A DNA stretch of 64,000 bases from Macrostomum lignano (lineage: Eukaryota). The notes under the pieces were generated by a model. It was not told the DNA's origin. It did no database searches and saw only the letters and a program-made list of their open reading frames with translations. The stretch lies in NCBI GenBank assembly GCA_002269645.1, contig NIVC01000827.1, positions 463,929-527,928 on the forward strand. The letters run 5' to 3'. Positions 5,325 to 61,433 of the stretch are shown here, in pieces (position 1 is the first letter of the stretch; every line of letters begins with the position of its first letter). The translations under genes were made by a program, and so were the position numbers.

Positions 5325-5925
5325 TGTTTCCTCCATCTCTCCCAGGCTCTCTCCTGTTCCATATACCATACTCTCTTCTCCATCTCCAAGACTCTCTCCT
5401 ACCCCATCTCCCAGAGTCTCTCCTGCCCCATCTCCCCGATTTTCTTCTGCTCCATCTTCCAGACTCTCTCCTGCCCCATCTCCAAGACTCTCTCCTGCTC
5501 CATCTCCCAGAGTCTCTCCTGCCCCATCTCCCCGATTTTCTTCTGCTCCATCTCACAGACTCTCTCCTGCCCCATCTCCCAGACTCTCTCCTGCTCCATC
5601 TCCCCTATTCTCACGTGCTCCATCTCCCAGATTATCTTCTCCATTTCCCAGACTCTCTCCTGCTCCATCTCTTAGAGTCTGCTTCATCTCCCAGACTTTC
5701 TCCTGCTCCATCTCCCATACTCTTTTCTCCGTCTCCAAGACTCTCTCCCGCTCCATCTCTCAGACTCTCTCCCGCTCCATCTCCCAGACTCTGTCCTCAA
5801 TCTCCCAGACTCTCTCCTGCTCTATTTCTCAGAGTCTCCCCTGCTCCATCTGTCAGACTCTCCTGCTTTATCTCCCCGATTTTCTCCTGCTCCATCTCTC
5901 AGACTCTCTCCTGCTTCATCTTTCA
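5325..5925. repeat. ~24-bp CT-rich minisatellite (ccatctcccagactctctcctgct)
   Basis: Tandem degenerate units; ORFs over it are low complexity. Confidence 0.88.
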
Positions 5926-6180
5926 GTCTACCCAATCGCAAAGAATGAATAAAAAGCTAAAACGCTTTTATTTCTACTTACAAGCTAGCTATTAGTAGCG
6001 CATTACGAGACATATTGCATAATTTAAATTTATAAAATCTGTAAACTTTAAATTTCATAGGTTCAGACAGCCGCTCAAAAATTGCATATAAAATCACCGA
6101 CAAATCCGAAGGCAAGTCGCCTATCTCAAATAATCTCAGTCCAAAATCTCACCTTCTTTCTAACAAACAGTCGAAGCCTC

Positions 6181-9100
6181 ATGCATTTCAGCGGCGCCCG
6201 AGGAGGCGGCTCCCGCTCTGTCAGCGATGTTGGCAGCGACAATCGCCAAGAAACTCCGTCGACATCCGCAATGTCTAAAATTCGACAACATCAGCAAATT
6301 CAATTTGGCGGCGGCGGTGGCGCGTCGCGCGACTCCAGCCTGGAGCGTCACGTGACCTTCTCGCCGGCCACACGCAGCCCCACGGCCGGGCACCGACGCC
6401 CGCCGCCATCGCCGGTGCCACCGTCGATGAGTCGTCGATTTGGCGCCGATGACGGCAGCGACGATGACGAGGAAGGAGAAGAAGACGATTATAGAGCTGA
6501 TGAAGCCGAGCGTCGGGAAGCTGGGCATCTTCATCCGGCCAGCTTGCTGCAGTTCCCCGGTAGCTCGCTGGTCATCCCGTGCCCGCTGCCGCAGTCCTGC
6601 CCGGCGACGCCGCTGCGTCGTTCGCGCGAGTCGACGGCGGCATCGAAGCAGCCGAGATCAACGCCGGAGGTGAGAGATTCGATTGCGGTGTGAGATCTCA
6701 GAGAGTGAGACTCTGAGAATAGATTCCAAAAATGGATGCTCACTTTAGTGAGACTTTGCAAATTCAATCCTAAAAGTGAAAATCCCTGAATGAGGCTTTC
6801 AGCAGAGTAAGATTCCTAGGATTGAGACTTTCGTAGTGAGATTTTCATAGCGATTTTCTCAGGATGAGATTTTTTAAGAGTGAGATTTTCATAGCGATTT
6901 TCTCAGGGTGAGATTTTAAGAGTGAGATTTTCATAGCGATTTTCTCATGATGAGATTTTAAGAGTGAGATTTTCATAGCGATTTTCTCAGGATGAGATTG
7001 TAAGAGTGAGATTTTCATAGCGATTTTCTCAGGGTGAGATTTTAAAAGTGAGATTTTCAGAGTGAGATTCCGGCAGTGAGATTCCTCAACTGCCACTACC
7101 AGAGTGAGATTCCCAGAGTGAGATTCCCAGAGTGAGATTCCCAGACTGGGAGTCTCTTACCAGAGTGAGATTCCCAGAGTGAGATTCCCAGACTGGGAGT
7201 CTCTTACCAGAGTGAGATTCCCAGAGTGAGATTCCCAGAGTGAGATTCCCAGAGTGAGATTTTCAGAGTGAGATTCCCAGAGTGAGATTCCAGCCACCCT
7301 AAGAGACAGATTTCATCCGATGAGTTTCAGGGTATAGGAATCTTTGACTTACTTACAGGGTATAGGAGTCTTGACATTGCGTGTCACAGGTAATTAAATA
7401 TTTTTCTACATTTTTAATAATTAATTCAAATATTGATTTCAACTGGCAATCCTGGTAACCCAATGACTTCCGTGGACAGAACCTTCCCATAGATTCCCAT
7501 GGAGCTTCCCCAAGCTAATCTCCTTCTCGTCTCCAGTAGCACGTGAGCTTCGTCTTCTGATGTTTCATGAGATGGGGAAAACGCAAACTAATCTTCATCA
7601 GTCAGTCACGCTGAATTTGGGTGAGGCTGAATTGGGATTCTGTTGTTTTAAAAGGGGAGATTGGGAGCAAATGACAAATCCAAGCTTTCTGAGGTCTAAT
7701 CTGAGGGACACGGAAACTCTGTACGGATTCGAAATCTCCCTCCTTAAATTGAATTTTTTAGAATGTCAGTTCAGGAGTCTCAATCTAGCAATGTCAGCCG
7801 GAGAACCTCACTCTGAATCTCACTCTGGGAATCTCATCCTAGGAATCTCACCATGAAAATCTCACTCTGGGAATCTCACCATGAAAAACTCACTCTGGGA
7901 ATCTCACCCTAGGAATCTCACCATGAAAATCTCACTCTGGGAATCTCACTCTGGGAATCAAACTCTGGGAGTCTCACACGGTGAATATCTCTCTGGGAAC
8001 CTCATTTTGGGAATCTCACTCTGGGAATATCACTCTGGGAATCTCACTCTGGGATCTCACTCTGGAAATCTCACTCTGGGATCTCACTCTGGAAATCTCA
8101 CTCTGGGATCTCACTCTTGAAATCTCACTCTGGAAATCTCACTCTGGAAATCTCACTCTGGAAATCTCACTCTGGGAATCTCACTCTGGGAATCTCACTC
8201 TGGGAATCTCACTCTGGGATCTCACTCTGGGAATCTCACTCTGGGATCTCACTCTGGAAATCTCACTCTGGGAATCTCACTCTGGCAATCTCACTCTGGG
8301 AATCTCACTCTGGGAATCTCACTCTGGGAATCTCACTCTGGGATCTCACTCTGGGAATCTCACTCTGGGATCTCACTCTGAAAATCTCACTCTGGAAATC
8401 TCACTCTGGAAATCTCACTCTGGAAATCTCACTCTGGGAATCTCACTCTGGGAATCTCATTCTGACAATCTCACTCTGGGAATCTCATTCTGGGAATCTC
8501 ACTCTGGAAATCTCACTCTGGAAATCTCACTCTGGAAATCTCACTCTGGAAATCTCACTCTGGGAATCTCACTCTGGGAATCTCATTCTGACAATCTCAC
8601 TCTGGGAATCTCATTCTGGGATCTCAGTCTGTGAATCTCACTCTATGAATCACAATTTGGGTATCTCACGACGGTAATCACACCCTGTGAATTTAACTCT
8701 GGAAAACTCACTCTGAGAATCTGACTCTAAGTTTAAGTACATCAGCTAGCAAAGTTTCTCTCCGGCACTGGTGTACTAATTGTGCAAGTTTCAACAACAT
8801 GCAATGGCCTCCGTTAAAATGGGAGCAGATATGAGCCCCTGTGACAGCCGCAGTCTCCCTATCCATTGATGTTTTTGTGGGAAACACGACTAAAAACCTG
8901 GATGGACGGGGGCCGACTTCCCGTGTTGAAAAGCATTGTCAGTTTCTTTTTAATTAAAAAAAAATTCAGCGTATACCTTACCTGCATGAGGATTAGGGCT
9001 AAAGCAATAATGCCTACTTATAATACAGTTATTGTCAGGATGAGGGCATTGTTAACTCTCTGTAGTGCTCAGTCTCGGGGGTGAGAGGCATGCAATGGAC

Positions 9101-12100
9101 ACATGAAGGGTATGAGAGTCACGGGAGAGTGGGGTGAGGGTTGCAGACATCAGAATCTCATATGAGAGTCACGGGAGAGTCGGGATGACGATGCAGACAT
9201 CAGATCAAAATCTCATATGAGAGTCACGGTGGTGCAATCAAAATCTCATATGAGAGTCACGGTGGTGCAATCAAAATCTCATATGAGAGTCACGGTGGTG
9301 CAATCAAAATCTCATATGAGAGTCACGGTGGTGCAATCAAAATCTCATATGAGAGTCACGAGTGAAGGCATCAAAATCTCACATAAGAGTCACGGGAGGG
9401 TCATCAAAATCTCATATGAGAGTCACGGAAGGGACATCAAAATCTCATATGAGAGTCACGGGGAGAGGCATCAGAATCTCATATGAGAGTCAAGAGTAGA
9501 GGCATCAGAATCTCATATGAGAGTCACGGGTAGAGGCATCAAAATCTCATATGAAAGCCATGGGTAGAGGCATCAAAATCTCATATGAAAGCCATGGGTA
9601 GAGGCATCAGAATCTCATATGAGAGTCAAGAGTAGAGGCATCAGAATCTCATATGAGAGTCACGGGGAGAGGCATCAAAATCTAATATGAGAGTCACGGT
9701 GTTGCAATCAAAATCTCATATGAGAGTCACGGTGGTACAATCAAAATCTCATATGAGAGTCACGGTGGTGCAATCAAAATCTCATATGAGAGTCACGGGT
9801 AGAGGCATAAAAATCTCATATGAAAGTCACGTGTAGAGGCATCAGAATCTCATACGAGAGGCACCGAGAATATTAGCAATAATTCGAATAAAAATCAAAC
9901 AGAAGCCTTTTTGTACTTTCAGGTTGCCAGATTATCCGTTGTCTTCGGGCACTTTGGCTCATTAAAGACCGTCAATTGATAATTAATGCTAATTTTTCAT
10001 CTCAGATTCCTCCTCTTCGATGAGGATGTGTCAGGATATTTTTAGATAAAAACTTCGCAAATTAAGTGATTTAGCTCGTATGTAAAACTCATAAATCAAC
10101 TGAATACGTGATCTGGAATCCTGCTATTGAAATCAGATGGTTAGATTAGTGAAATTTTATACCATAAGTAGCGAAGAAAGAAATTGGATTATTTCATAAT
10201 TGAGGGCGACAAAACCATGAATAAATCGCTGAGGAGATAGGAGGGTAAGAGAGTAGGAAGAGAAGGAGGAAGGCTTGAAATGAAGGTGGGAAAAGAGAGA
10301 ATGAGGGAGGGAGAGAAGGAGAGAGTGAGAGAGAGGGAGAGAGGGAGAGAGGGAGACAGGGAGACAGGGAGAGAGGAAGACAGGGAGAGGGGGAGAGAGG
10401 GTGAGAGGGAGGGAGAGAGGGAGACAGGGAGACAGGGAGAGAGGAAGACAGGGAGACAGGGAGAGAGGGAGAGAGGGAGAGAGGGAGGTAAGGAGAGAGG
10501 GGGAGAGGGAGAGAGGGAGACATGGAGACAGAGAGAGAGGGAGAGAGGGAGAGAGGGAGAGAGAGGGAGGCAGGGAGACAGGAAGACAGGGAGACAGGGT
10601 GAGAGGGAGAGAGGGAGAGAGGGAGACATGGAGACAGAGAGAGAGGGAGACAGGGAGATAGGGAGAGAGAGGGAGGCAGGGAGACGGGGAGACAGGGAGA
10701 CAGGGAGACAGGGAGACAGGGAGACAGGGAGACAGGGAGACAGGGAGATAGGGAGACAGGGAGACAGGGAGAATAGAGGGACAGAGGGAGACAGGGAGAC
10801 AGGGTGAGAGGGAGACAGGGAGACAGGGAGAGAGGGAGAGAGGAAGACAGGGAGACAGGGAGACAGGGAAAGAGGGAGAGAGGGAGACAAGGAGACAGGG
10901 TGAGAGGGAGACAGGGAGACAGGGAGACAGGGTGAGAGGGAGACAGGGAGACAGGGAGACAGGGTGAGAGGGAGACAGGGAGACAGGGAGACAGGGTGAG
11001 AGGGAGACAGGGAGACAGGGAGACAGGGAGACAGGGAGACAGGGAGAGAGGGACAGAGGGAGAGAGGGAGACAGGGAGACAGGGTGAGAGGGAAGTAGGG
11101 AGACACGGAGACAGGGTGAGAGGGAGACAGGGAGACAGGGTGAGAGGGAAATAGGGAGACAGGGAGACAGGGTGAGAGGGAGACAGGGAGACAGGGAGAG
11201 AGGGAGGGAGACAGGGAGACAGGAAGGGAGGGAGAGAGGGAGATAGGTAGAGAGGGAGAGGGAGAGAGGGAGAGAGGGAGAGAGGGAGACACGGAGAGAG
11301 GAAGAGAGAGAGGGTGAGAAGGAAAGATGGAGAGAAGGAGAGAGGGAGAGAGGGAGACAGGGAGACAGGAAGGGAGGGAGAGAGGGAGATAGGTAGAGAG
11401 GGAGAGGGAGGGAGGGAGAGAGGGAGAGAGGGAGACACGGAGAGAGGAAGAGAGAGAGGGTGAGAAGGAAAGATGGAGAGAGGGAGAGAGAGAGAGAGGG
11501 AGAAAGGGAGAGAGAGAGGGTGAGAAGGAGAGAGGGAGAGAGGGATAGAGAGGGAGACAGGGAGGGAGGGAGAGAGGGAGATAGATAGAAAGGGAGAGGG
11601 AGAGAGGGAGACGGGGAGACAGGGAGACAGGGAGACAGGGAGAGAGGGAGATAGGTAGAGAGGGAGAGGGAGAGAGGGAGAGAGGGAGAGAGGGAGACAC
11701 GGAGAGAGGAAGAGAGAGAGGGTGAGAAGGAAAGATGGAGAGAGGGAGAGAGGGAGAGAGGGAGAAAGGGAGAGAGAGAGGGTGAGAAGGAGAGAGGGAG
11801 AGAGGGATAGAGAGGGAGACAGGGAGGGAGGGAGAGAGGGAGATAGATAGAAAGGGAGAGGGAGAGAGGGAGACAGGGAGACAGGGAGAGAGGAAGACAG
11901 GGAGACAGGGAGAGAGGGAGAGAGGGAGAGAGGGAGGTAAGGAGAGAGGGAGAGAGGGAGAGAGGGAGACATGGAGACAGAGAGAGAGGGAGAGAGGGAG
12001 AGAGGGAGAGAGAGGGAGGCAGGGAGACAGGAAGACAGGGAGACAGGGTGAGAGGGAAATAGGGAGACAGGGAGACAGGGTGAGAGGGAGACAGGGAGAC

Positions 12101-14313
12101 AGGGAGAGAGGGAGGGAGACAGGGAGACAGGAAGGGAGGGAGAGAGGGAGATAGGTAGAGAGGGAGAGGGAGAGAGGGAGAGAGGGAGAGAGGGAGACAC
12201 GGAGAGAGGAAGAGAGAGAGGGTGAGAAGGAAAGATGGAGAGAGGGAGAGAGGGAGAGAGGGAGACAGGGAGACAGGAAGGGAGGGAGAGAGGGAGATAG
12301 GTAGAGAGGGAGAGGGAGGGAGAGAGGGAGAGAGGGAGACACGGAGAGAGGAAGAGAGAGAGGGTGAGAAGGAAAGATGGAGAGAGGGAGAGAGAGAGAG
12401 AGGGAGAAAGGGAGAGAGAGAGGGTGAGAAGGAGAGAGGGAGAGAGGGATAGAGAGGGAGACAGGGAGGGAGGAGAGAGGGAGATAGATAGAAAGGGAGA
12501 GGGAGAGAGGGAGACAGGGAGACAGGGAGAGAGGAAGACAGGGAGACAGGGAGAGAGGGAGAGAGGGAGAGAGGGAGGTAAGGAGAGAGGGAGAGAGGGA
12601 GAGAGGGAGACATGGAGACAGAGAGAGAGGGAGAGAGGGAGAGAGGGAGAGAGAGGGAGGCAGGGAGACAGGAAGACAGGGAGACAGGGTGAGAGGGAGA
12701 GAGGGAGAGAGGGAGACATGGAGACAGAGAGAGAGGGAGACAGGGAGATAGGGAGAGAGAGGGAGGCAGGGAGACGGGGAGACAGGGAGACAGGGAGACA
12801 GGGAGACAGGGAGACAGGGAGACAGGGAGACAGGGAGATAGGGAGACAGGGAGACAGGGAGAATAGAGGGACAGAGGGAGACAGGGAGACAGGGTGAGAG
12901 GGAGACAGGGAGACAGGGAGAGAGGGAGAGAGGAAGACAGGGAGACAGGGAGAGAGGGAGAGAGGAAGACAGGGAGACAGGGAGACAGGGACAGAGGGAG
13001 AGAGGGAGACAAGGAGACAGGGTGAGAGGGAGACAGGGAGACAGGGAGACAGGGTGAGAGGGAGACAGGGAGACAGGGAGACAGGGTGAGAGGGAGACAG
13101 GGAGACAGGGAGACAGGGTGAGAGGGAGACAGGGAGACAGGGAGACAGGGAGACAGGGAGAGAGGGACAGAGGGAGAGAGGGAGACAGGGAGACAGGGTG
13201 AGAGGGAAATAGGGAGACAGGGAGACAGGGTGAGAGGGAGACAGGGAGACAGGGAGAGAGGGAGGGAGACAGGGAGACAGGAAGGGAGGGAGAGAGGGAG
13301 ATAGGTAGAGAGGGAGAGGGAGAGAGGGAGAGAGGGAGAGAGGGAGACACGGAGAGAGGAAGAGAGAGAGGGTGAGAAGGAAAGATGGAGAGAGGGAGAG
13401 AGGGAGAGAGGGAGACAGGGAGACAGGAAGGGAGGGAGAGAGGGAGATAGGTAGAGAGGGAGAGGGAGGGAGGGAGAGAGGGAGAGAGGGAGACACGGAG
13501 AGAGGAAGAGAGAGAGGGTGAGAAGGAAAGATGGAGAGAGGGAGAGAGGGAGAGAGGGAGAAAGGGAGAGAGAGAGGGTGAGAAGGAGAGAGGGAGAGAG
13601 GGATAGAGAGGGAGACAGGGAGGGAGGGAGAGAGGGAGATAGATAGAAAGGGAGAGGGAGAGAGGGAGACGGGGAGACAGGGAGACAGGGAGACAGGGAG
13701 AGAGGGAGATAGGTAGAGAGGGAGAGGGAGAGAGGGAGAACTGCTACAGCAATAACTGTTCATCATTATCACCATTTCACAGCAGGATCAGCTGAAGAGG
13801 ACCGTCAGCAGTTCGGCTGGGATCCCCAGACCGGGTGAAATTTTCCCGAGCATCGCGGCTCCGGCTCGACTGCCACAGGATGGGGCCGAGGTCGATCAAC
13901 TGCTCCTTACTGACTGCTTCGATTCCCAGCATCCATTGCTGCTTTTTATCTTGCCGCCATCGAAGCGGACCCAGCGCGATCATCTAGCAAACTCGGTGTT
14001 GCAAACTTTCTCCAATCGAGTGGACGAATTTACCAACTGTCGCCTGATTGGTCGACTCTGTAGTCATGGTGACACCGAGGAAATCGGTGCGGTAGCTTTT
14101 CCAATACTGGTGGACCTGTCGGGTCGTGTTGATGGAGCCTGCGGACTCGGCGATAACTCGACTGTCTGTGGAATTTTCGCTCTGAGCTGCGTGGATTTTG
14201 GAGGCGACAAGCGGGCGATTCTGCGGTGGTCAGCGCTGTTTGCCGCTGTTGATGGAGCTCCGAAACAGCCTGATGGATGGGTGGAGCTTGCGCTGAAGAT
14301 GCTTTCTGGATGA
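6181..14313 (+). CDS. Two-exon protein: disordered Pro/acidic N-terminus plus C-terminal peroxiredoxin (AhpC/TSA)-fold domain lacking the peroxidatic Cys; join(6181..6669,13783..14313), ~339 aa
   Basis: Exon 1 ends at CCGGAG|gtgaga (phase 0). Acceptor ttcacag|CAG at 13782 is also phase 0. Exon 2 aligns by eye to 2-Cys Prx: PRPGEIFPSIAAPA ~ KIGHPAPNFKATA; FSNRVDEFTNCRLIG ~ FSDRAEEFKKLNCQVIG; FPILVD ~ IPLVSD. The start (6181 or 6271) and possible extra internal exons are uncertain. Confidence 0.6.
6690..7290 (+). repeat. Tandem gagtgagattccca-type repeats (left arm of inverted pair)
   Basis: 14-15-bp units plus a longer ~36-38-bp variant at 6830-7050. Confidence 0.88.
7805..8730 (-). repeat. 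Tandem tgggaatctcactc repeats (right arm, reverse complement of 6690-7290)
   Basis: The unit is the reverse complement of the left-arm unit. Confidence 0.88.
9108..9860. repeat. ~33-bp minisatellite containing the palindrome TCTCATATGAGA
   Basis: atcaaaatctcatatgagagtcacggtggtgca repeated with variants. Confidence 0.9.
10262..13740. repeat. ~3.5-kb polypurine (GA-rich, gggagacag/gggagagag) satellite
   Basis: Almost purely A/G on the + strand with internally duplicated blocks; produces the spurious PLSLSP and ERGREG ORFs. Confidence 0.97.
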
Positions 14314-15744
14314 CAGCACGGTGAATTTGAAGAGGTACAAATAGACTTTTGAATCTTTGACGTCTCACAATTGAAGTTTGTGTCTTCAGTGGAATGTTAT
14401 TACGAACTAATTTTTGTCTGCAGATTTAAATCTTTGTGTCCGTCCAATAGAAGTACTGTGTCTCTGCAAATTGGGGTCGGAGACGTCGTTTTTTGAAGCT
14501 TCGCGCCTAAGACCTTTTGGTTCGATTTCGTGCTTGTTCGAAAATTGAGCTTGGGGGGGGGGGTTTCTGCAATTTACACCCATGACGGTCAGCACCCAAG
14601 CCACAGAGAGTAGGTACATGTCCGACGATTAGACAGTTAGGGTGTATGAGTGCCCTCCTGCGTATTTTTAATTTATTCTGTGTGCTGGTTTCTCGTCTTA
14701 AAATAAATCGATAGTTAAACAGTTCGATTTCTTTTCCAGGGTGAACTGGGCTGCTCACACCAAGAAGAAACAAACCAAGGATTCACAGCTAGTGAAACCA
14801 CTGCCTATACCGATCAGTCCCAGACAATACCTATTGTACGTACTTGAATAAACGTTAAATTATCGAAGAGAGCTTATGAATTACACAATACATTTTCCTA
14901 GATGTGTTAGTCATGCGAGTAACTGAAGTCATTCCATTTTCATAAATTTTTCAAGTAGTTAGTCGGATTTAGAAAATATCAAGTAAGCAAAATGTGCATC
15001 AGCTTTCTTACCGCGCACTTTTATCGAATAATAGTCTATGTTTCATGCTAGAATTTCTCTCACGGATGGGCCGCATAGTGCCATAGACTAAAAAAATACA
15101 CTTTAACAAACTTAGGTAAGGAACAGCTATAATAAGCTGTTTTTTAATTAGCGTTGACCCCTCCATGCATAAAGTTGACGATGACTTGTTTAATTTGGTT
15201 GGAGCGATTAAGGCGACGTGCATAAAATACATGTAATCGTGTTCCTTTGATGCCAACAAACCAGGATGTTAACACTATCAATAAAATATTGATTATACTT
15301 AACGTCGTTACGATTCTGTTTATAGTTTTTTTACGAACAGTAACTAAATTCCCTCATCAGATAGTTGCTGCATTATATCGTAACGTAAATAACACCAGAA
15401 AGGTTCTCTCACTCTCGTAGTGTAAACTCGGTCCAACTCGATAAAACCAATTGAGAATTCATATCCAGATAAAAAACAACTGATAAAAGCGATAAAAGTA
15501 CACAAGGTCAGACCAAAAGTGAGCATCAACTAATAAATTACTATAGTCTATGGCCGCAAGCATCGGACGCATTGAAACAGGGAAATTTACGCCATAGACT
15601 TGCGCATTTCACAGTCTATGGTCGCTAATGACGAACTGTTTTTCAGATCGAGAGGAGTGGGGGAGAGTGAGAGGCGCTTAGATTCGAGGGAGCGGACACA
15701 AGTAGTTTACAAAAAATCTGCTCTCAGTGAAAGCCAAAGTCAGC

Positions 15745-16740
15745 ATGGCCAAGATTCTAATTTGCGGCTTGTGCAACAAAGTGTTTATTGCCGAGGTAAA
15801 TCTGATCGAACATCTCAAAACTCATATACCATTAGCTATGCACGTGGCCTTAGCGGCCAAAAGTGGTAGCTCTTCGAGAAACAATGAAGGTCAACAAAAC
15901 TTCGTCAGTCCTAGCGTGGCTGTCTGCACCATAAAGGTAACTGCTTAATTTTTTAATCACTTACGAGAATTACGACAACCAATAGAATAGGAATCTGATT
16001 AAAGCTTCCGAATTATTTTCAAACACGACACCCAGGTGGAGATTTGCAACGCGTCTCTCTCAGACGGTTCGACGCCCATTAACCAGATCAGCCAGAGACA
16101 AGAACCAGCCGGCTCAGAAAGTCAACAGATGCTCGATCAGCAAACCATTCCGTCTTTACCGCGTCGAATACCAGAGGACGCCATCCAGAGTCGTGAGCCC
16201 TGCCCGACTAGCGACCAAGTGAACGTGCTCCGTCTCCGCCGCTTGGTCGCCGCCAATCGCTACCGACGCAAAGTGGCCTTCGAGTGTCGAGTTTGTCGCC
16301 GACAATTCAACTATCAGACTGCCGCAACGAAGCACGCCAACCACTATCACGCCGCCGCCGCGCATAACCGGCCCAAGCCGTACAACTTTCGCCAGAGCGC
16401 CAACGCTGGTCGCGTCTTGCCAGCAAGACGAATTCAAGAGAAACGCATTGCCGCTAGAAAGCAACCGAAGCAGAATAAAAAAACTTTGCCAAGTCGCGAT
16501 GCGGCCCGGCAGGCGGACTTGGTCGACATGGAGGCGGATGGCAACAACGAGGAGGCCGCATCTGACAACGAAGCCGACCGGTCGTCCAGCCGCGGAAACG
16601 AAATAGTCGCCGAAGAAGATGACGAAGTCGAGATGCAGCCAAGCTCCGCTAGTGCCGACAACCAGGCGACATCGCAGGCGCCTCCCCAATCCGTTGCGTC
16701 TATAATTGAAGCGGCAAGGACCCAGCAACAACAACAACAT

Positions 16741-16772
<32 letters not shown>

Positions 16773-17624
16773 GCAGCAGCAATTTCTGCATCAACAACTG
16801 TTGTTGTCGGCGGTACAAGCTGAACGACAACGACTTCAGATGGCAGTTGCAAGTAGGCAATTTTATTACTGGTACTTTACAGATTTATATATCCTTATTC
16901 AAGCCTTACTGTATCCCCACAAAAATCCCCCACAGCGACGTCCTCTACGGCGCAATTGGGTCAGCCATCGCGGATTCTGCCTTGCCCACACTGTCCGATG
17001 ACTTTCACGGACATTGGCTTCCTGGCCAGGCACGTCCAACTGCACAACGAACTGCAGAAACAGCAACCGCTCCTATTGCAACAGGCGTCGCAGAATTCCA
17101 CGCAGCCGTCGCAGTCAGCCTTCGGTTCAATTCCAATTCCGGGTGGTTCGATTCCTGTTTCTGTAGCGCCCTGGTTGACCCCAGCCAGACTGGCTCCAGC
17201 TTCCTCCTCTCAGCAGCAGCAGCCGCAGGCCAAAGGACCAGCACCTGCTGCACCAACAACCAAAACGCAGCTCGTTAGTCGGCCAACCCCACTTCTACCG
17301 CCAATGCCATCGCATTCGCAAGCTCTGCTAATGAGTCGGCCGGCAGGACCTGGACTTCTGCGGCCGAGGCAGCCGTTGCCGATACCATTCACAGCGCTGA
17401 CCGGTCTGCAGCAGCAGCAACAGCAACAGAAACTTCCAGCGGGATTCCTTCCTGCCAACTTCATCTATGGCGGCGTTCCCGCTAATAACCTGGCAGCTCA
17501 GCGTGCTCTGCAGCAGACGCAACTGACTCAGCAGTCGTTGCCAATGCGCCTCATGCCGAGTATTCGACCGCAGCCGATTCTGGCAGCTCGAGATCATACC
17601 GCCGCTCCATCTTCGTCCAAATGA
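15745..17624 (+). CDS. C2H2 zinc-finger protein with three dispersed fingers and polyQ tracts; join(15745..15936,16036..16852,16936..17624), 565 aa
   Basis: Fingers CGLCNKVFIAEVNLIEHLKTH, CRVCRRQFNYQTAATKHANHYH and CPHCPMTFTDIGFLARHVQLH. Two short GT-AG introns with matching phases 0 and 1; total 1698 nt. Confidence 0.85.
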
Positions 17625-45283: not shown

Positions 45284-48200
45284 TTAGCAGAGGACCGATT
45301 TGCCCCGACGATTGGTTGCCATGGCAACCAGGGCAGCGCCGCCGGCAATTCCAAATTGGGCGACGTCCGCCGAGTAGCTGCAAGATGAAACCGGGTGCTT
45401 AAATTATTCGGTGCCTGCATGCGTATTTCTAGATTTGTTGAAGCAGTTCGATCAAAATTTTATTAGACATCCCGTCTCAATTCCAGCCTTAGAAGATAAG
45501 GATGAGATACAGGAGCCTATTCAGAATAACAGCTATGAGCGTTCCTGAAACTCATGATATATCAGCATTCCTGAATCTCATATATGAAGATTCCTGATTC
45601 TCATATATCTGAATTTCTGAATCTCCTATATCAGAATATGAAACATTCCCGAATCTTTTATATTACCATTCCTGAATCCCATATATATGAGCATTCCTGA
45701 ATCTCACCTATGAGCATTCCTGAATCTCACCTATGAGCATTCCTGAATCTCACCTATGAGCATTCCTGAATCTCACCTATGAGCATTCCTGAATCTCACC
45801 TATGAGCATTCCTGAATCCCACCTATGCGCATTCCTGAATCTCACCTATGAGCGTTCCTGAATCTCACCTATGAGCGTTCTTGAATCTCACCTATGAGCA
45901 TTCCTGAATCTCACCTATGCGCATCCCTAAATCTCACCCTACAAGATACAATGAAACCCACCTCGAAACAGCTCCCACAGCTGAGCCAATCTGCCACAGA
46001 ATCTTCTTTTGGAGCGAAGCGCTCGGCACTTGACGGGTCAGTTCGTCGGAGGCCAGCAAAGTGGACAAGGTCTTGTCGAAATTGACGGTCGGCTGACTCG
46101 GTAGCGACACAGTCTGATGATCAGGTTTGTCAAGTGAGATGAGTCGAGAGCTGTTAAGAACGGAGGGCTCTTCAATAACGACGTCGAACTTAGTGCTGGA
46201 TGATTTTGTGCTGAGCACCGGCTGGGAGCCAAAATTGGTAATGCGCTTTGACTGCTTGGACAAATGGACTCGCTCCGCAGCCATAGTCAGGCGTCGGTCG
46301 TTCGACACGGAACGACGTTCTCGTGACAGCCGTCGATCCATCGACACAACGCGACGCTCAGCAGCTCTAGTCAGACGTCGGTCAGTCGACACAGCGCGAC
46401 GCTCAGCAGCTCTAGTCAGACGTCGGTCAGTCGACACAGCGCGACGCTCAGCAGCTCTAGTCAGACGTCGGTCAGTCGACACAGCGCGACGCTCAGCAGC
46501 CCTAGTCAGACGCTGGTCAGTCGACACGGAACGACGCTCTCGTGACAGCCGTCGGTCAGTCGACACAGCGCGACGCTCAGCAGCTCTAGTCAGACGTCGG
46601 TCAGTCGACACAGCGCGACGCTCAGCAGCTCTAGTCAGACGTCGGTCAGTCGACACAGCTCGACGCTCAGCAGCCCTAGTCAGACGTCGGTTGTTCGACA
46701 CGGAACGACGCTCTCGTGACAGCCGTCGGTCCATCGACACAACGCGACGCTCAGCAGCTCTAGTCAGACGTCGGTCGTTCGACACGGAACGACGCTCTCG
46801 TGACAGCCGTCGGTCCATCGACACAGCGCGAGGCTCAGCAGCTCTAGTCAGACGTTGGTCAGTCGACACGGAACGACGCTCTCGTGACAGCCGTCGGTCA
46901 GTCGACACAGCGCGACGCTCAGCAGCCCAAGTCAGGCGTCGGTCATTCGACACGGAACGACGCTCTCGTGGCAGCCTTCGGTCAGTCGACACAGCGCGAC
47001 GCTCAGCAGCTCTAGTCAGACGTCGGTCGTTCGACACGGAACGATGCTCTCGTGACAGCCGTCGGTCCATCGACACAACGCGACGCTCAGCAGCTCTAGT
47101 CAGACGTCGGTCAGTCGACACAGCGCGACGCACAGAAGCCCTAGAGAGGCGTCGGTCGTTCGACACGGAACGACGCTTAGAAGCTCTAGTCAGCCGTCGG
47201 TCAGTCGTCACAGCGCGACGCTCAGCAGCTCTAGTCAGGCGTCGGTCGTTCGACACGGAACGACGCTCTCGTGACAGCCGTCGGTCAGTCGACACAGCGC
47301 GACGCTCAGCAGCTCTAGTCAGACGTCGGTCGTTCGACACGGAACGACGCTCTCGTGACAGCCGTCGGTCCATCGACACAGCGCGACGCTCAGCAGCTCT
47401 AGTCAGACGTCGGTCAGTCGACACAACGCGACGCTCAGCAGCTCTAGTCAGACGTCGGTCAGTCGACACAGCGCGACGCTCAGCAGCTCTAGTCAGACGT
47501 CGGTCAGTCGACACAGCGCGACGCTCAGTAGCTCTAGTCAGGCGTCGGTCGTTCGACACGGAACGACGCTCTCGTGACAGCCGTCGGTCAGTCGACACAG
47601 CGCGACGCTCAGCAGCTCTAGTCAGACGTCGGTCGTTCGACACGGAACGACGCTCTCGTGACAGCCGTCGGTCAGTCGACACAGCGCGACGCTCAGCAGC
47701 TCTAGTCAGACGTCGGTCAGTCGGCACAGCGCGACGCTCAGCAGCTCTAGTCAGACGTCGGTCAGTCGACACAACGCGACGCTCAGCAGCTCTAGTCAGA
47801 CGTCGGTCGTTCGACACGGAACGAGGCTCTCGTGACAGCTGTCGGTCAGTCGACACAGCGCGACGCTCAGCAGCTCTAGTCAGACGTCGGTCAGTCGTCA
47901 CAGCGCGACGCTCAGCAGCTCTAGTCAGACGTCGGTCAGTCGACACAGCGCGACGCTCAGTAGCTCTAGTCAGGCGTCGGTCGTTCGACACGGAACGACG
48001 CTCTCGTGACAGCCGTCGGTCAGTCGACACAGCGCGACGCTCAGCAGCTCTAGTCAGACGTCGGTCAGTCGACACAGCGCGACGCTCAGCAGCTCTAGTC
48101 AGACGTCGGTCAGTCGACACAACGCGACGCTCAGCAGCTCTAGTCAGACGTCGGTCGTTCGACACGGAACGACGCTCTCGTGACAGCCGTCGGTCCATCG

Positions 48201-49833
48201 ACACAGCGCGACGCTCAGCAGCTCTAGTCAGACGTCGGTCAGTCGACACTGCGCGACGCTCAGAAGCTCTAGTCAGACGTCGGTCGTTCGACACGGAACG
48301 AGGCTCTCGTGACAGCCGTCGGTCAGTCGACACAGCGCGACGCTTAGCAGCTCTAGTCAGACGTCGGTCAGTCGACACAGCTCGACGCTCAGCAGCCCTA
48401 GTCAGACGTCGGTCGTTCGACACGGAACGACGCTCTCGTGACAGCCGTCGGTCAGTCGACACAGCGCGACGCTCAGCAGCTCTAGTCAGACGTCGGTCAG
48501 TCGACACAGCGCGACGCACAGAAGCCCTAGAGAGGCGTCGGTCGTTCGACACGGAACGACGCTTAGAAGCTCTAGTCAGCCGTCGGTCAGTCGTCACAGC
48601 GCGACGCTCAGCAGCTCTAGTCAGGCGTCGGTCGTTCGACACGGAACGACGCTCTCGTGACAGCCGTCGGTCAGTCGACACAGCGCGACGCTCAGCAGCT
48701 CTAGTCAGACGTCGGTCGTTCGACACGGAACGACGCTCTCGTGACAGCCGTCGGTCCATCGACACAGCGCGACGCTCAGCAGCTCTAGTCAGACGTCGGT
48801 CAGTCGACACAGCGCGACGCTCAGCAGCTCTAGTCAGACGTCGGTCAGTCGACACAACTTGACGCTCAGAAGCTCTAGTCAGACGTCGGTCGTTCGACAC
48901 GGAACGAGGCTCTCGTGACAGCTGTCGGTCAGTCGACACAGCGCGACGCTCAGCAGCTCTAGTCAGACGTCGGTCAGTCGTCACAGCGCGACGCTCAGCA
49001 GCTCTAGTCAGACGTCGGTCAGTCGACACAGCGCGACGCTCAGTAGCTCTAGTCAGACGTCGGTCGTTCGACACGGAACGACGCTCTCGTGACAGCCGTC
49101 GGTCAGTCGACACAGCGCGACGCTCAGCAGCTCTAGTCAGACGTCGGTCAGTCGACACAGCGCGACGCTCAGCAGCTCTAGTCAGACGTCGGTCAGTCGA
49201 CACAACGCGACGCTCAGCAGCTCTAGTCAGACGTCGGTCGTTCGACACGGAACGACGCTCTCGTGACAGCCGTCGGTCCATCGACACAGCGCGACGCTCA
49301 GCAGCTCTAGTCAGACGTCGGTCAGTCGACACTGCGCGACGCTCAGAAGCTCTAGTCAGACGTCGGTCGTTCGACACGGAACGAGGCTCTCGTGACAGCC
49401 GTCGGTCAGTCGACACAGCTCGACGCTCAGCAGCCCTAGTCAGACGTCGGTCGTTCGACACGGAACGACGCTCTCGTGACAGCCGTCGGTCAGTCGACAC
49501 AGCGCGACGCTCAGCAGCTCTAGTCAGACGTCGGTCAGTCGACACAGCGCGACGCTCAGAAGCTCTAGTCATTCGTCGGTCGTTCGACACGGAACGACGC
49601 TCTCGTGACAGTTGACTGCTCTGTGGGAGCCGTCGCACATCAACTCTTGACTGACGAGCGTCATTCACTACCGAAGTCTTCCCGACATCCAACACAGAGA
49701 TGCGGCTGCCCGGCTGTGGTCCAGCAGGAGCGGCATCTCCGGCGTTAACTCCGACTTCAGCGATGTGACAGTCGATTGTCTTCCTGGTCATGAAGACCAG
49801 AGTAATCAACAGCAGCAGCTTGACGTCCACCAT
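45284..49833 (-). CDS. Secreted Arg-rich tandem-repeat protein; complement(join(49833..45962,45377..45284)), ~1321 aa
   Basis: Signal-peptide-like MVDVKLLLLITLVFMTRKTIDC; roughly 75-80 units of RRAVSTDRRLTRAAE / RRSVSNDRRLTRAAE / RRAVSTDRRLSRE; unique flanks on both sides of the repeat. Donor tcgag|gtgggt at 45961 (phase 2) fits acceptor tttcatcttgcag at 45378; the last exon is less certain. Confidence 0.75.
45540..45930. repeat. 23-bp intronic minisatellite (attcctgaatctcacctatgagc)
   Basis: Tandem units in the last intron of the Arg-rich gene. Confidence 0.9.
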
Positions 49834-51065
49834 CTGGAAGTGGAGAAAAGTTTGAGAAAATTTGACAGCTTTTAGATTAGTATTGCAAAAAAGCATGTTT
49901 TTCGAATATTTAATCCCTTTAGCATTTATCAATTTCTTAGCCAAGATACATGTACCGTCCCGGGAAAATTTCTGATCGAACAGTGCAAATTCGAACAAAA
50001 TCGGTCAAGCCATTCAGGAGAAAATCGATTTCGTACAAACAAACAACTCATTTTTAGTACATAGGAAAAAGGTAGTTTTGCAGGAAGGTTGCTGGATCAG
50101 AGGATCCAGCTTTAGTGGGCACCTTAGGCTTGATAGGCATATATAGTATTTTCACTAGGCCTCTTGGACGACAACTGGTCTGAAGTTTGTATACAATACT
50201 TGCCTGGCGATGAGAAAGTATCCGCATGCGTTATGTACGAGTATCAGTGTCTCCGCTTGCCTATACTTGCTGGCTCCGGGTCAATTTTAGGCAAGGGTTG
50301 GCAAACTCCCGCGCGTGAAGGTTTTTTCGCTCAAGTCTGGTCTCTTCTCAGCTCTCTTCTTTCTTCTACTCTCCTCCCCTCTTTTCTCTCCATCTCCTCT
50401 CTCCCTTCTCCCTTTTCTCTTCTTTCCTCTCCTAGCCCGCAGTCATTCGCAAGATTCGATATATTTCAATATTCAAATGATGAGGACGCACTTTTTCCCA
50501 AATCCCGCGCTAGCACATGGGCTCTAAACTTACTTGCCTACTAACAGTGGGCAGTGGGCATTTTTATCCTTTTTCTGCGAATTTTCATAGAATCTATACT
50601 AGATATAATGTCTGGCCATACTAGTAGTCATAATAACATAGGCGCAGCTTTTTGGGTCATAAATCATCGCTTTCGAAGCTGATCTGACAGCCACCTGCGC
50701 CTCACTCAGTGTTGAAGCGGGCGCCAGATGGTCTGAGAGGATGCGGGCGGTAGCTTTTTTCTCATCATTTTGACAGGCCATCAAGATTTATGAGGTCAGA
50801 GCCTATTGTTCGGATTCACTCAAGCGTGTGACAGCTTTGACAGCTATGCGTTTTACCCCTAAAAGTACCTTGGGATTAGCGATTAGCGATTTCTCTTCAT
50901 TATCTTCACTTTCTATTTAATAAGAGCTTTCTAATGTATATTTTTTCATTAATTTCTGTCAATCCTACGCGAAAAGTCATAAATCATTTTGTTGCGATTT
51001 TGAGTGATTTATGGCCGCACCTGTCATCTTTTTACGACCCTGTGGGAACTGATAGGATCTCTCGG

Positions 51066-54764: not shown

Positions 54765-61433
<6,669 letters not shown>

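What the first reader, a model, noticed from the sequence alone, without database searches (positions are those of the whole stretch)
6181..14313. Pseudo-peroxiredoxin: PxxxTxxC becomes PxxxTxxD, fused to a disordered acidic N-terminus
Seen: exon 13783-14313 follows the 2-Cys Prx fold along most of its length. The active-site loop reads P-SKR-T-QR-D (GAT at 13978-13980), keeping Pro and Thr but with Asp at the peroxidatic Cys. The conserved Arg of FRGLF appears as Cys (VCGIF), and the C-terminal resolving-Cys/YF tail is absent. Established: Prx catalysis needs PxxxTxxC plus that Arg. Inference: a catalytically dead Prx-fold scaffold or redox-sensing adaptor, attached to a Pro/Ser-rich, Asp/Glu-tract N-terminal region across a 7.1-kb repeat-filled intron.
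Basis: partly seen in the sequence, partly recalled or inferred. Interest (0 to 1): 0.7.

Follow-up and report, generated by a model that had tools for sequence, protein, structure and literature searches.

The report
Possible dead peroxiredoxin relic in flatworm
An unannotated 176-codon open reading frame in a Macrostomum flatworm genome faintly but measurably resembles the antioxidant enzyme peroxiredoxin while lacking its catalytic residues, so it may be a fast-evolving dead copy; neither its expression nor its claimed link to an upstream exon could be shown.

Summary
The window is Macrostomum lignano or a near-identical genome.

Standard tests find no peroxiredoxin (Prx):
- Pfam, NCBIfam, PDB phmmer, BLASTP against human PRDX2 and two searches of billions of proteins gave nothing.
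- The AlphaFold single-sequence model is uninformative (pLDDT 35), and Foldseek found nothing.

Profile-profile comparison does find a signal:
- Against an 88-sequence Prx profile, residues 12-124 align colinearly with PRDX2 3-119 (P 1.5e-5, probability 80%; 49% with a typical-2-Cys-only profile).
- None of 600 shuffles reached the observed score, and this ORF ranks first of 124 window ORFs.
- Three separate segments each land at the expected Prx position.

The peroxidatic Cys is absent, and the aligned Arg position holds Cys. The last 43 residues show no significant similarity.

My reading is a highly diverged, catalytically dead Prx-derived ORF (about 0.5); chance resemblance in a chance ORF remains a serious rival (about 0.3).

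The fusion to the acidic exon across a 7.1-kb intron is untested. The M. lignano spliced leader ends in ATG and would be in frame at this acceptor, which gives a simpler stand-alone gene model. Function is unknown.

The parts
13783..14313 (+). Candidate terminal or single exon: 176 codons plus TGA stop (14311-14313)
   Evidence: Translation; frame open from 13756 with TAA at 13753-13755; unique within the window; position-specific base composition resembles the window's known exons (0.041 per codon against 0.018-0.062, about the 95th percentile of random windows)
13781..13785 (+). Tandem AG acceptors (cAG|cAG, NAGNAG) after a pyrimidine-rich stretch; usable for cis-splicing or SL trans-splicing
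   Evidence: Sequence. The M. lignano SL ends in ATG (PMC8629364), so joining at 13782/3 or 13785/6 gives an in-frame Met. The enriched [T/C]TNCAG motif is not matched.
13816..14181 (+). Prx-like region, residues 12-133, colinear with human PRDX2 residues 3-131 (beta1 to beta6), with about 9 indels including loss of about 11 residues at helix alpha3
   Evidence: hhalign P 1.5e-5, probability 79.5% (all-Prx profile); P 1.8e-4, probability 48.7% (2-Cys profile). 0 of 600 shuffles reach the score; top of 124 window ORFs. Split segments map to the expected positions.
13954..13980 (+). Remnant of the active-site loop, PPSKRTQRD; Pro and Thr kept, no Cys; Asp66 (GAT 13978-13980) or Ala68 stands at the peroxidatic Cys position, depending on where the 4 extra residues are placed
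14008..14031 (+). FSNRVDEF, matching FSNRAEDF of helix alpha2 in Prx1-type enzymes; strongest local signal
   Evidence: Segment 49-90 alone: P 3.7e-4, mapping to PRDX2 55-74
14098..14118 (+). FPILVDL, matching (I/Y)PLLAD of strand beta5
   Evidence: Segment 91-135 alone: P 1.6e-3, mapping to PRDX2 94-117. This is the only stretch HMMER aligned.
14164..14178 (+). VCGIF, aligned with YRGLF; Cys129 (TGT 14167-14169) at the position of the conserved catalytic Arg
   Evidence: hhalign with the 2-Cys profile, low-confidence columns
14182..14310 (+). C-terminal 43 residues with no significant Prx similarity. Two rival registers: WVELALKML = helix alpha5 with the protein ending there, or KQPDGW = VCPAGW.
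   Evidence: P 0.095-0.19 when tested alone; registers seen
6181..6669 (+). If unspliced it stops at TGA 6691-6693. Link to the Prx-like ORF unproven.
   Evidence: No homologues, no Pfam or NCBIfam hit, flat GC1/2/3 and no coding periodicity.
6670..13782 (+). Putative 7113-nt intron, or outron/intergenic DNA: 14-mer arrays 6803-7291 and 7803-8728, 34-mer array 9204-9864, (GAGAGAGG)n 10295-13739
   Evidence: Tandem Repeats Finder; composition
14702..14852 (+). First AATAAA signals downstream of the stop (14702 and 14847)
   Evidence: Pattern scan; consensus match only

Best explanation
The ORF at 13783-14313 is a highly diverged descendant of a Prx1/AhpC-type (typical 2-Cys) peroxiredoxin gene in Macrostomum lignano.

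Shown:
- It keeps a recognisable trace of the N-terminal two thirds of the fold: the beta1-beta2 hairpin, beta3, the FSNRxxEF helix, beta4, the PLLxD strand beta5 and beta6.
- There is no Cys where the peroxidatic Cys belongs, and Cys stands at the aligned Arg position.
- There is no significant match to the C-terminal arm that carries the resolving Cys.

Inferred:
- It cannot reduce peroxides.
- The alignment needs about 9 indels, all in frame, and the 186-codon frame has no stop. So if the homology is real, the frame was kept by selection and the ORF is, or recently was, translated as a non-catalytic protein.
- The alignment deletes about 11 residues at helix alpha3 (decamer-building A-type interface, from my knowledge of Prx structures). 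The beta7/C-terminal arm (B-type dimer interface) is unrecognisable. I therefore expect a monomeric thioredoxin-fold remnant acting, if at all, as a binding module, not a Prx-like decamer or chaperone.
- The simplest gene model is a single-exon gene trans-spliced at the AG at 13782 (or 13785). The spliced leader's terminal ATG then supplies the in-frame start codon.
For: - hhalign of the exon against an 88-sequence Prx profile: score 38.3, P 1.5e-5, probability 79.5%, query 12-124 to PRDX2 3-119. With the 2-Cys-only profile: 32.4, P 1.8e-4, probability 48.7%, extending to residue 133.
- The score rose from 27.5 (8-sequence profile) as the profile deepened.
- 0 of 400 and 0 of 600 composition-preserving shuffles reach the observed score (maxima 24.2 and 26.1; Gumbel P 9e-6).
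- Among 124 stop-to-stop ORFs of at least 100 codons in the window, this one scores 38.0 and the next 22.3.
- A reversed-profile decoy scores 13.8.
- Non-overlapping segments each map to the colinear Prx position: 1-48 to 4-21 (P 0.11), 49-90 to 55-74 (P 3.7e-4), 91-135 to 94-117 (P 1.6e-3).
- The order of secondary-structure elements in the low-confidence AF2 model (E E E H E E E E H) is compatible with Prx.
- Base periodicity in the frame resembles the window's PIG-L and GWT1 exons.
- The M. lignano SL sequence ends in ATG (PMC8629364; also PMC10468722), and the ORF starts in phase 0 right after an AG.
Against: - No hit by Pfam AhpC-TSA/Redoxin or any Pfam or NCBIfam model at E<=10, by PDB phmmer, or by BLASTP against PRDX2.
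- hmmsearch --max with the same deep profile gives 3.1 bits, E 4.5, no better than other six-frame segments.
- A P of 1.5e-5 would be E of about 0.3 against a Pfam-sized library, and the hypothesis was chosen after looking at the sequence.
- No homologue of any kind in 5.8 billion clusters or 1.84 billion representatives (the one hit is a spurious bacterial repeat protein).
- The ORF is not in the UniRef M. lignano proteome, although the neighbouring PIG-L gene is there at 98-100% identity.
- AF2 pLDDT is 35 and Foldseek finds no thioredoxin fold.
- The C-terminal quarter is not significantly similar.
- There is no expression evidence, and the acceptor does not match the enriched trans-splice motif [T/C]TNCAG.
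Confidence: 0.5

Rival explanations
1. Chance: the ORF is a non-coding open frame in a 56% G+C unique island between satellite arrays, and the Prx resemblance is a coincidence that a motivated reader picked out.
For: - All standard sequence searches are negative.
- An ORF of this length is not rare in the window: 124 stop-to-stop ORFs of at least 100 codons.
- There is no in-frame start codon, no homologue and no annotation in UniRef M. lignano.
- The AF2 model is uninformative.
- P 1.5e-5 is not significant after correcting for a family library of about 20,000 models.
Against: - hhalign probability is 49-80%.
- 0 of 1000 shuffles in total reach the score, and the ORF is an outlier among all window ORFs.
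- The score increased with profile depth.
- Three independent segments land colinearly at the right Prx positions.
- The frame shows coding-like periodicity.
Confidence: 0.3
2. Relic: a true Prx duplicate or retrocopy that is now a non-expressed pseudogene. It lost its start codon and catalytic residues, and its frame survives only by luck or because inactivation is recent.
For: - The whole Prx-like region lies in one exon with no ATG.
- Catalytic residues are gone.
- It is embedded in repeat arrays.
- It is not annotated in UniRef M. lignano.
Against: At about 25% identity with about 9 in-frame indels and no stop in 186 codons, long neutral decay is very unlikely. From the base composition, the chance of no stop is about 8e-4, and each indel has at most a 1/3 chance of being in frame (my calculation on the alignments). 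Typical 2-Cys Prx are otherwise so conserved (54-66% identity between human and bacteria for most of the 80 loci) that this much change implies a long history.
Confidence: 0.12
3. One reading: a two-exon gene (6181-6669 joined to 13783-14313) encoding a disordered acidic N-terminus fused to a dead Prx domain that works as a redox-sensing adaptor.
For: - Good GAG|GTGAGA donor and cAG acceptor, both in phase 0.
- GT[G/A]AG and CAG are the enriched M. lignano cis-splice motifs (PMC8629364).
- The domain has 6 Cys.
Against: - The 7113-nt intron compares with a mean of 1,114 nt in M. lignano (PMC10468722); the two PIG-L introns I could measure in this window are about 230 and 470 nt.
- Exon 1 has no homologue, a flat GC1/2/3 and no periodicity, and ORFs open on several frames, as expected for 65% G+C DNA.
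- Exon 1 has its own stop 8 codons past the donor.
- Nothing bears on redox sensing.
Confidence: 0.08

Closest known systems
Typical 2-Cys peroxiredoxins (Prx1/AhpC subfamily; human PRDX1/2, yeast Tsa1, bacterial AhpC)
   Same: Colinear profile-profile similarity from the N-terminal beta-hairpin to beta6. It includes the subfamily-typical FSNRxxEF helix and the (G)IGxVxFPLLxD strand. Pro and Thr of the active-site loop are retained.
   Different: - No peroxidatic Cys, and Cys in place of the aligned Arg.
- 4 extra residues in the active-site loop/helix, and about 11 residues missing at alpha3.
- The C-terminal arm with the resolving Cys is not recognisable.
- About 25% identity, where most family members share more than 50%.
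- Below every Pfam and HMMER threshold.
Pseudoenzymes in general (catalytically dead paralogues kept as scaffolds or regulators)
   Same: Loss of all catalytic residues with apparent retention of an open frame derived from an enzyme fold.
   Different: No evidence here of expression, conservation or partners. My two full-text searches found no described natural peroxiredoxin pseudoenzyme to compare with.
SL trans-spliced genes of Macrostomum lignano whose start codon is the ATG at the end of the spliced leader
   Same: The ORF begins in phase 0 directly after an AG acceptor and has no start codon of its own. The 35-nt SL ends in ATG (PMC8629364; PMC10468722 notes it as a likely start codon).
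   Different: No SL-containing reads could be examined. The acceptor hexamer (TCACAG or CAGCAG) does not match the enriched [T/C]TNCAG motif, and 3.4 kb of GA repeat lies immediately upstream.

Membership tests
Peroxiredoxin (Pfam AhpC-TSA PF00578 / Redoxin PF08534) | Match to the family HMM at or above the curated threshold | tested here: not met
   0 Pfam families at E<=10. My own Prx HMM with filters off: 3.1 bits, E 4.5.
Peroxiredoxin (Pfam AhpC-TSA PF00578 / Redoxin PF08534) | Homology detectable by profile-profile comparison, colinear over the domain | tested here: inconclusive
   hhalign P 1.5e-5, probability 79.5% (all Prx) and 48.7% (2-Cys only) for residues 12-133. Shuffle, decoy and split controls support it. 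It would not be significant against a whole family library.
Peroxiredoxin (Pfam AhpC-TSA PF00578 / Redoxin PF08534) | PxxxTxxC motif with the peroxidatic cysteine | tested here: not met
The loop reads PPSKRTQRDHLA. The nearest Cys residues are 45 and 86.
Peroxiredoxin (Pfam AhpC-TSA PF00578 / Redoxin PF08534) | Conserved active-site Arg (R127 of PRDX2; invariant in alignment A1) | tested here: not met
   TVCGIFA aligns with AYRGLFI, putting Cys129 at the Arg column, in low-confidence columns.
Peroxiredoxin (Pfam AhpC-TSA PF00578 / Redoxin PF08534) | Thioredoxin fold shown by structure | tested here: inconclusive
   AF2 single-sequence model: mean pLDDT 35.1, pTM 0.29. Foldseek against PDB: no match with E<=0.001 and none to a thioredoxin fold. 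No homologues exist to build an alignment.
Typical 2-Cys Prx (Prx1/AhpC subfamily) | Resolving Cys in a C-terminal arm (VCPxxW) and, in sensitive forms, the YF helix | tested here: not met
   No Cys after residue 136. The C-terminal 54 aa alone give P 0.12-0.19. KQPDGW may be a remnant of VCPAGW with Gln for Cys, but this is not significant. There is no Tyr anywhere in the ORF.
Expressed protein-coding gene / pseudoenzyme | Transcript, splice junction or peptide evidence; purifying selection in orthologues | not testable with these tools
   No eukaryotic read or genome collection is available. The ORF is absent from the UniRef M. lignano proteome, although the neighbouring gene is present.
SL trans-spliced gene of M. 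lignano | SL-bearing reads at an AG acceptor; enriched motif [T/C]TNCAG | tested here: inconclusive
   An AG acceptor is present and the SL ATG would be in frame. The motif is not matched; PMC8629364 reports it at 9,551 of 21,754 trans-splice sites. Reads are not available.

The most novel reading that the evidence does not exclude
A Macrostomum-specific, translated pseudo-peroxiredoxin: a Prx1-type domain that has lost the peroxidatic Cys, the catalytic Arg, both oligomer interfaces and the resolving arm, evolves so fast that no homologue is detectable, and receives its start codon from the spliced leader.
Probability: 0.3. Interest if true: 0.5.

Novelty: new variant of a known kind. Interest (0 to 1): 0.3.

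Why it matters
Typical 2-Cys peroxiredoxins are among the most conserved enzymes known. My two literature searches found no described natural catalytically dead paralogue.

If this ORF is translated, it would show what the Prx scaffold can be reused for once peroxidase chemistry and oligomerisation are gone. It would also be an example of a gene whose only start codon comes from the flatworm spliced leader.

If it is not expressed, it is just an unannotated relic or a coincidence in a repeat-rich region, and of little consequence. On present evidence the case is modest and rests on one kind of test.

Tried and rejected
- Pfam and NCBIfam scans of both exons gave nothing.
- PDB sequence search gave nothing.
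- Word-indexed homologue searches of exon 2 and exon 1 gave nothing at E<=1.
- The exhaustive HMMER search of 1.84 billion representatives gave one hit. It is a 1677-aa bacterial repeat protein and I rejected it as spurious.
- BLASTP against PRDX2 gave E 0.57 in the wrong register.
- AF2 single-sequence modelling plus Foldseek PDB was uninformative.
- I did not run AF2 with a Prx alignment.
- The search for related loci with the 8-subfamily alignment failed because it was too diverse.
- The BCP scan of metagenomes returned only near-identical E. coli BCP, and the PRDX6 scan of viral contigs found nothing, so the profile could not be widened beyond the Prx1 type.
- Rfam and tRNA scans of the window were empty.
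- No second Prx-like segment and no DNA duplicate of either exon exists in the window.
- The bacterial promoter/terminator scan is irrelevant for a eukaryote.
- An early guess that the window was from an insect was rejected: PIG-L is 98-100% identical to M. lignano over its first two mapped segments (residues 1-236).
PRDX2 scores 450 bits full-length to 5ijt_A. The profile of all eight retrieves the PDB peroxiredoxins. BCP is 100% identical to E. coli contigs.


Full report
**What is in the sequence.** Bases 13783-14313 (+) translate without interruption to 176 residues followed by TGA.
- The frame is open from 13756, just after a TAA. It contains no ATG, GTG or TTG before 13936.
- The exon starts in phase 0 directly after tttcacAG|CAG|GAT, a tandem AG acceptor.
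- Upstream, an ATG at 6181 opens a 163-codon Ser/Pro/Arg/Gly-rich frame with an acidic tract. It ends at GAG|gtgaga (6669/6670), also in phase 0. If unspliced, it stops 8 codons later.
- The 7113 nt in between are tandem arrays: 14-mers at 6803-7291 and 7803-8728, a 34-mer at 9204-9864, and a 3.4-kb (GAGAGAGG)n array at 10295-13739 that ends 43 nt before the acceptor.

**Organism.** The window carries PIG-L and GWT1 genes. PIG-L is 98-100% identical over its first two mapped segments (residues 1-236) to a UniRef protein of the flatworm Macrostomum lignano. The window is therefore M. lignano or a near-identical genome.

**Standard homology tests are all negative.**
- Pfam and NCBIfam give no family at E<=10 for either exon.
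- phmmer against all PDB sequences gives nothing.
- The word-indexed search of 5.8 billion clusters gives nothing at E<=1 for either exon.
- An exhaustive HMMER scan of 1.84 billion representatives gives one hit, a bacterial 1677-aa repeat protein, which I regard as spurious.
- The AlphaFold single-sequence model has mean pLDDT 35, and Foldseek against the PDB finds no thioredoxin fold. With no alignment available, this is uninformative rather than negative.

**Profile-profile comparison does find a signal.** I checked them against the PDB and against metagenomic E. coli contigs.
- hhalign of the exon against these eight gave score 27.5, P 0.0012. Residues 12-122 were colinear with PRDX2 3-117, and 0 of 400 shuffles reached that score.
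- I then added 80 bacterial typical 2-Cys Prx fetched from genomes. The score rose to 38.3 (P 1.5e-5, probability 79.5%).
- With a typical-2-Cys-only profile the score was 32.4 (P 1.8e-4, probability 48.7%). That alignment extends to residue 133, so that TVCGIFA pairs with AYRGLFI.
- Controls:
  - 0 of 600 shuffles reached the score (maximum 26.1, Gumbel P 9e-6).
  - Of 124 stop-to-stop ORFs of at least 100 codons in the window, this one scores 38.0 and the runner-up 22.3.
  - A reversed profile scores 13.8.
- Non-overlapping pieces tested alone each map to the expected place: 1-48 to Prx 4-21 (P 0.11), 49-90 to 55-74 (P 3.7e-4), 91-135 to 94-117 (P 1.6e-3). Residues 136-176 map nowhere.
- The best-matching stretches are FSNRVDEF against FSNRAEDF, and IGAVAFPILVDLSGRV against LGPLNIPLLADVTRRL.

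**Cautions on that signal.**
- hmmsearch with filters off, using the same deep profile, gives only 3.1 bits. That is no better than other six-frame segments.
- A P of 1.5e-5 would be E of about 0.3 against a Pfam-sized library.
- The hypothesis was chosen after inspecting the sequence.
- I therefore put real homology at roughly two in three, not higher.

**Catalytic residues.**
- There are four extra residues between the beta3 strand (LLLFIL) and FSNR. hhalign places them so that the peroxidatic Cys column meets Ala68.
- In either register Pro and Thr are kept and there is no Cys. The nearest Cys residues are at 45 and 86.
- The conserved Arg column meets Cys129, in low-confidence columns.
- The C-terminal 43-54 residues are not significantly Prx-like.
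- The alignment deletes about 11 residues at helix alpha3.
- If this is a Prx relative, it fails every catalytic criterion of the family and cannot be filed as a peroxiredoxin.

**Gene or relic?**
- If the homology is real, about 25% identity with about 9 indels, all in frame, and no stop in 186 codons is very unlikely under neutral decay. By my estimate the chance of no stop is about 8e-4, and each indel has at most a 1/3 chance of being in frame. So the frame was probably kept by selection.
- Position-specific base composition in the frame resembles that of the window's PIG-L and GWT1 exons. It lies at about the 95th percentile of random windows, which is weak support. Exon 1 shows no such periodicity.
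- Against a real gene: the ORF is missing from the UniRef M. lignano proteome, which does contain the neighbouring gene.
- Assemblies of M. lignano sequencing runs seem not to be in the protein collection, because the PIG-L cluster has UniRef as its only source. Their silence therefore says nothing about expression.

**Gene model.**
It needs a 7.1-kb intron, where the M. lignano mean is 1,114 nt (PMC10468722). The two PIG-L introns I could measure in this window are about 230 and 470 nt.
- The 35-nt M. lignano spliced leader is CGGTCTCTTACTGCGAAGACTCAATTTATTGCATG, ending in ATG. About 30% of the species' genes are trans-spliced (PMC8629364).
- Joined to either AG of the tandem acceptor, that ATG is in frame with the ORF. 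This gives a 177- or 176-residue stand-alone protein and explains the missing start codon.
- The acceptor does not match the enriched [T/C]TNCAG motif, which is reported at 9,551 of 21,754 trans-splice sites. Only reads can decide between the models.

**Verdict.**
- The most likely reading (about 0.5) is a fast-evolving, catalytically dead, probably monomeric Prx-derived protein of unknown role, possibly started by the spliced leader.
- Chance resemblance in a chance ORF (about 0.3) and a silent relic (about 0.12) remain open.
- The specific fusion and adaptor story has little support (about 0.08).
- The finding is of modest interest until RNA-seq and cross-species comparison are done.

Noticed in passing
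window 55949-60046 (-): PIG-L (60046-59867 and 59636-59109) is followed on the same strand by GWT1/PIG-W sequence (58635-57999; Pfam GWT1 ORF at 55949-56476). The matching M. lignano UniRef protein P0002 carries both PF02585 and PF06423. So two consecutive GPI-anchor biosynthesis enzymes are either fused or sit in one operon here.
   Followed up: partly
window 45934-49998 (both strands): A tandem array of about 45 nt gives a 1354-aa ORF of DRRLTRAAERRAVST-like units on the minus strand and a 911-aa ORF on the plus strand. It could be a satellite or a repeat protein; this is undecided.
   Followed up: no
window 10295-13739: A 3.4-kb polypurine (GAGAGAGG)n array with extreme strand asymmetry (GC skew about 0.75, AT skew about 0.73) ends 43 nt upstream of the acceptor of the Prx-like ORF. 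It creates ORFs of 950-1190 aa on the minus strand that are artefacts of the repeat.
   Followed up: partly
window 16036-17624 (+): Overlapping ORFs with weak C2H2 zinc-finger matches and a long polyglutamine run lie 1.7 kb downstream of the Prx-like ORF. This is probably a real neighbouring gene.
   Followed up: no
window 5338-5921 and 6803-9864: The GC-rich 'exon 1' island (about 5950-6800) is a unique stretch sandwiched between a 24-mer array upstream and 14-mer and 34-mer arrays downstream. With 65% G+C it has ORFs open in several frames on both strands.
   Followed up: partly
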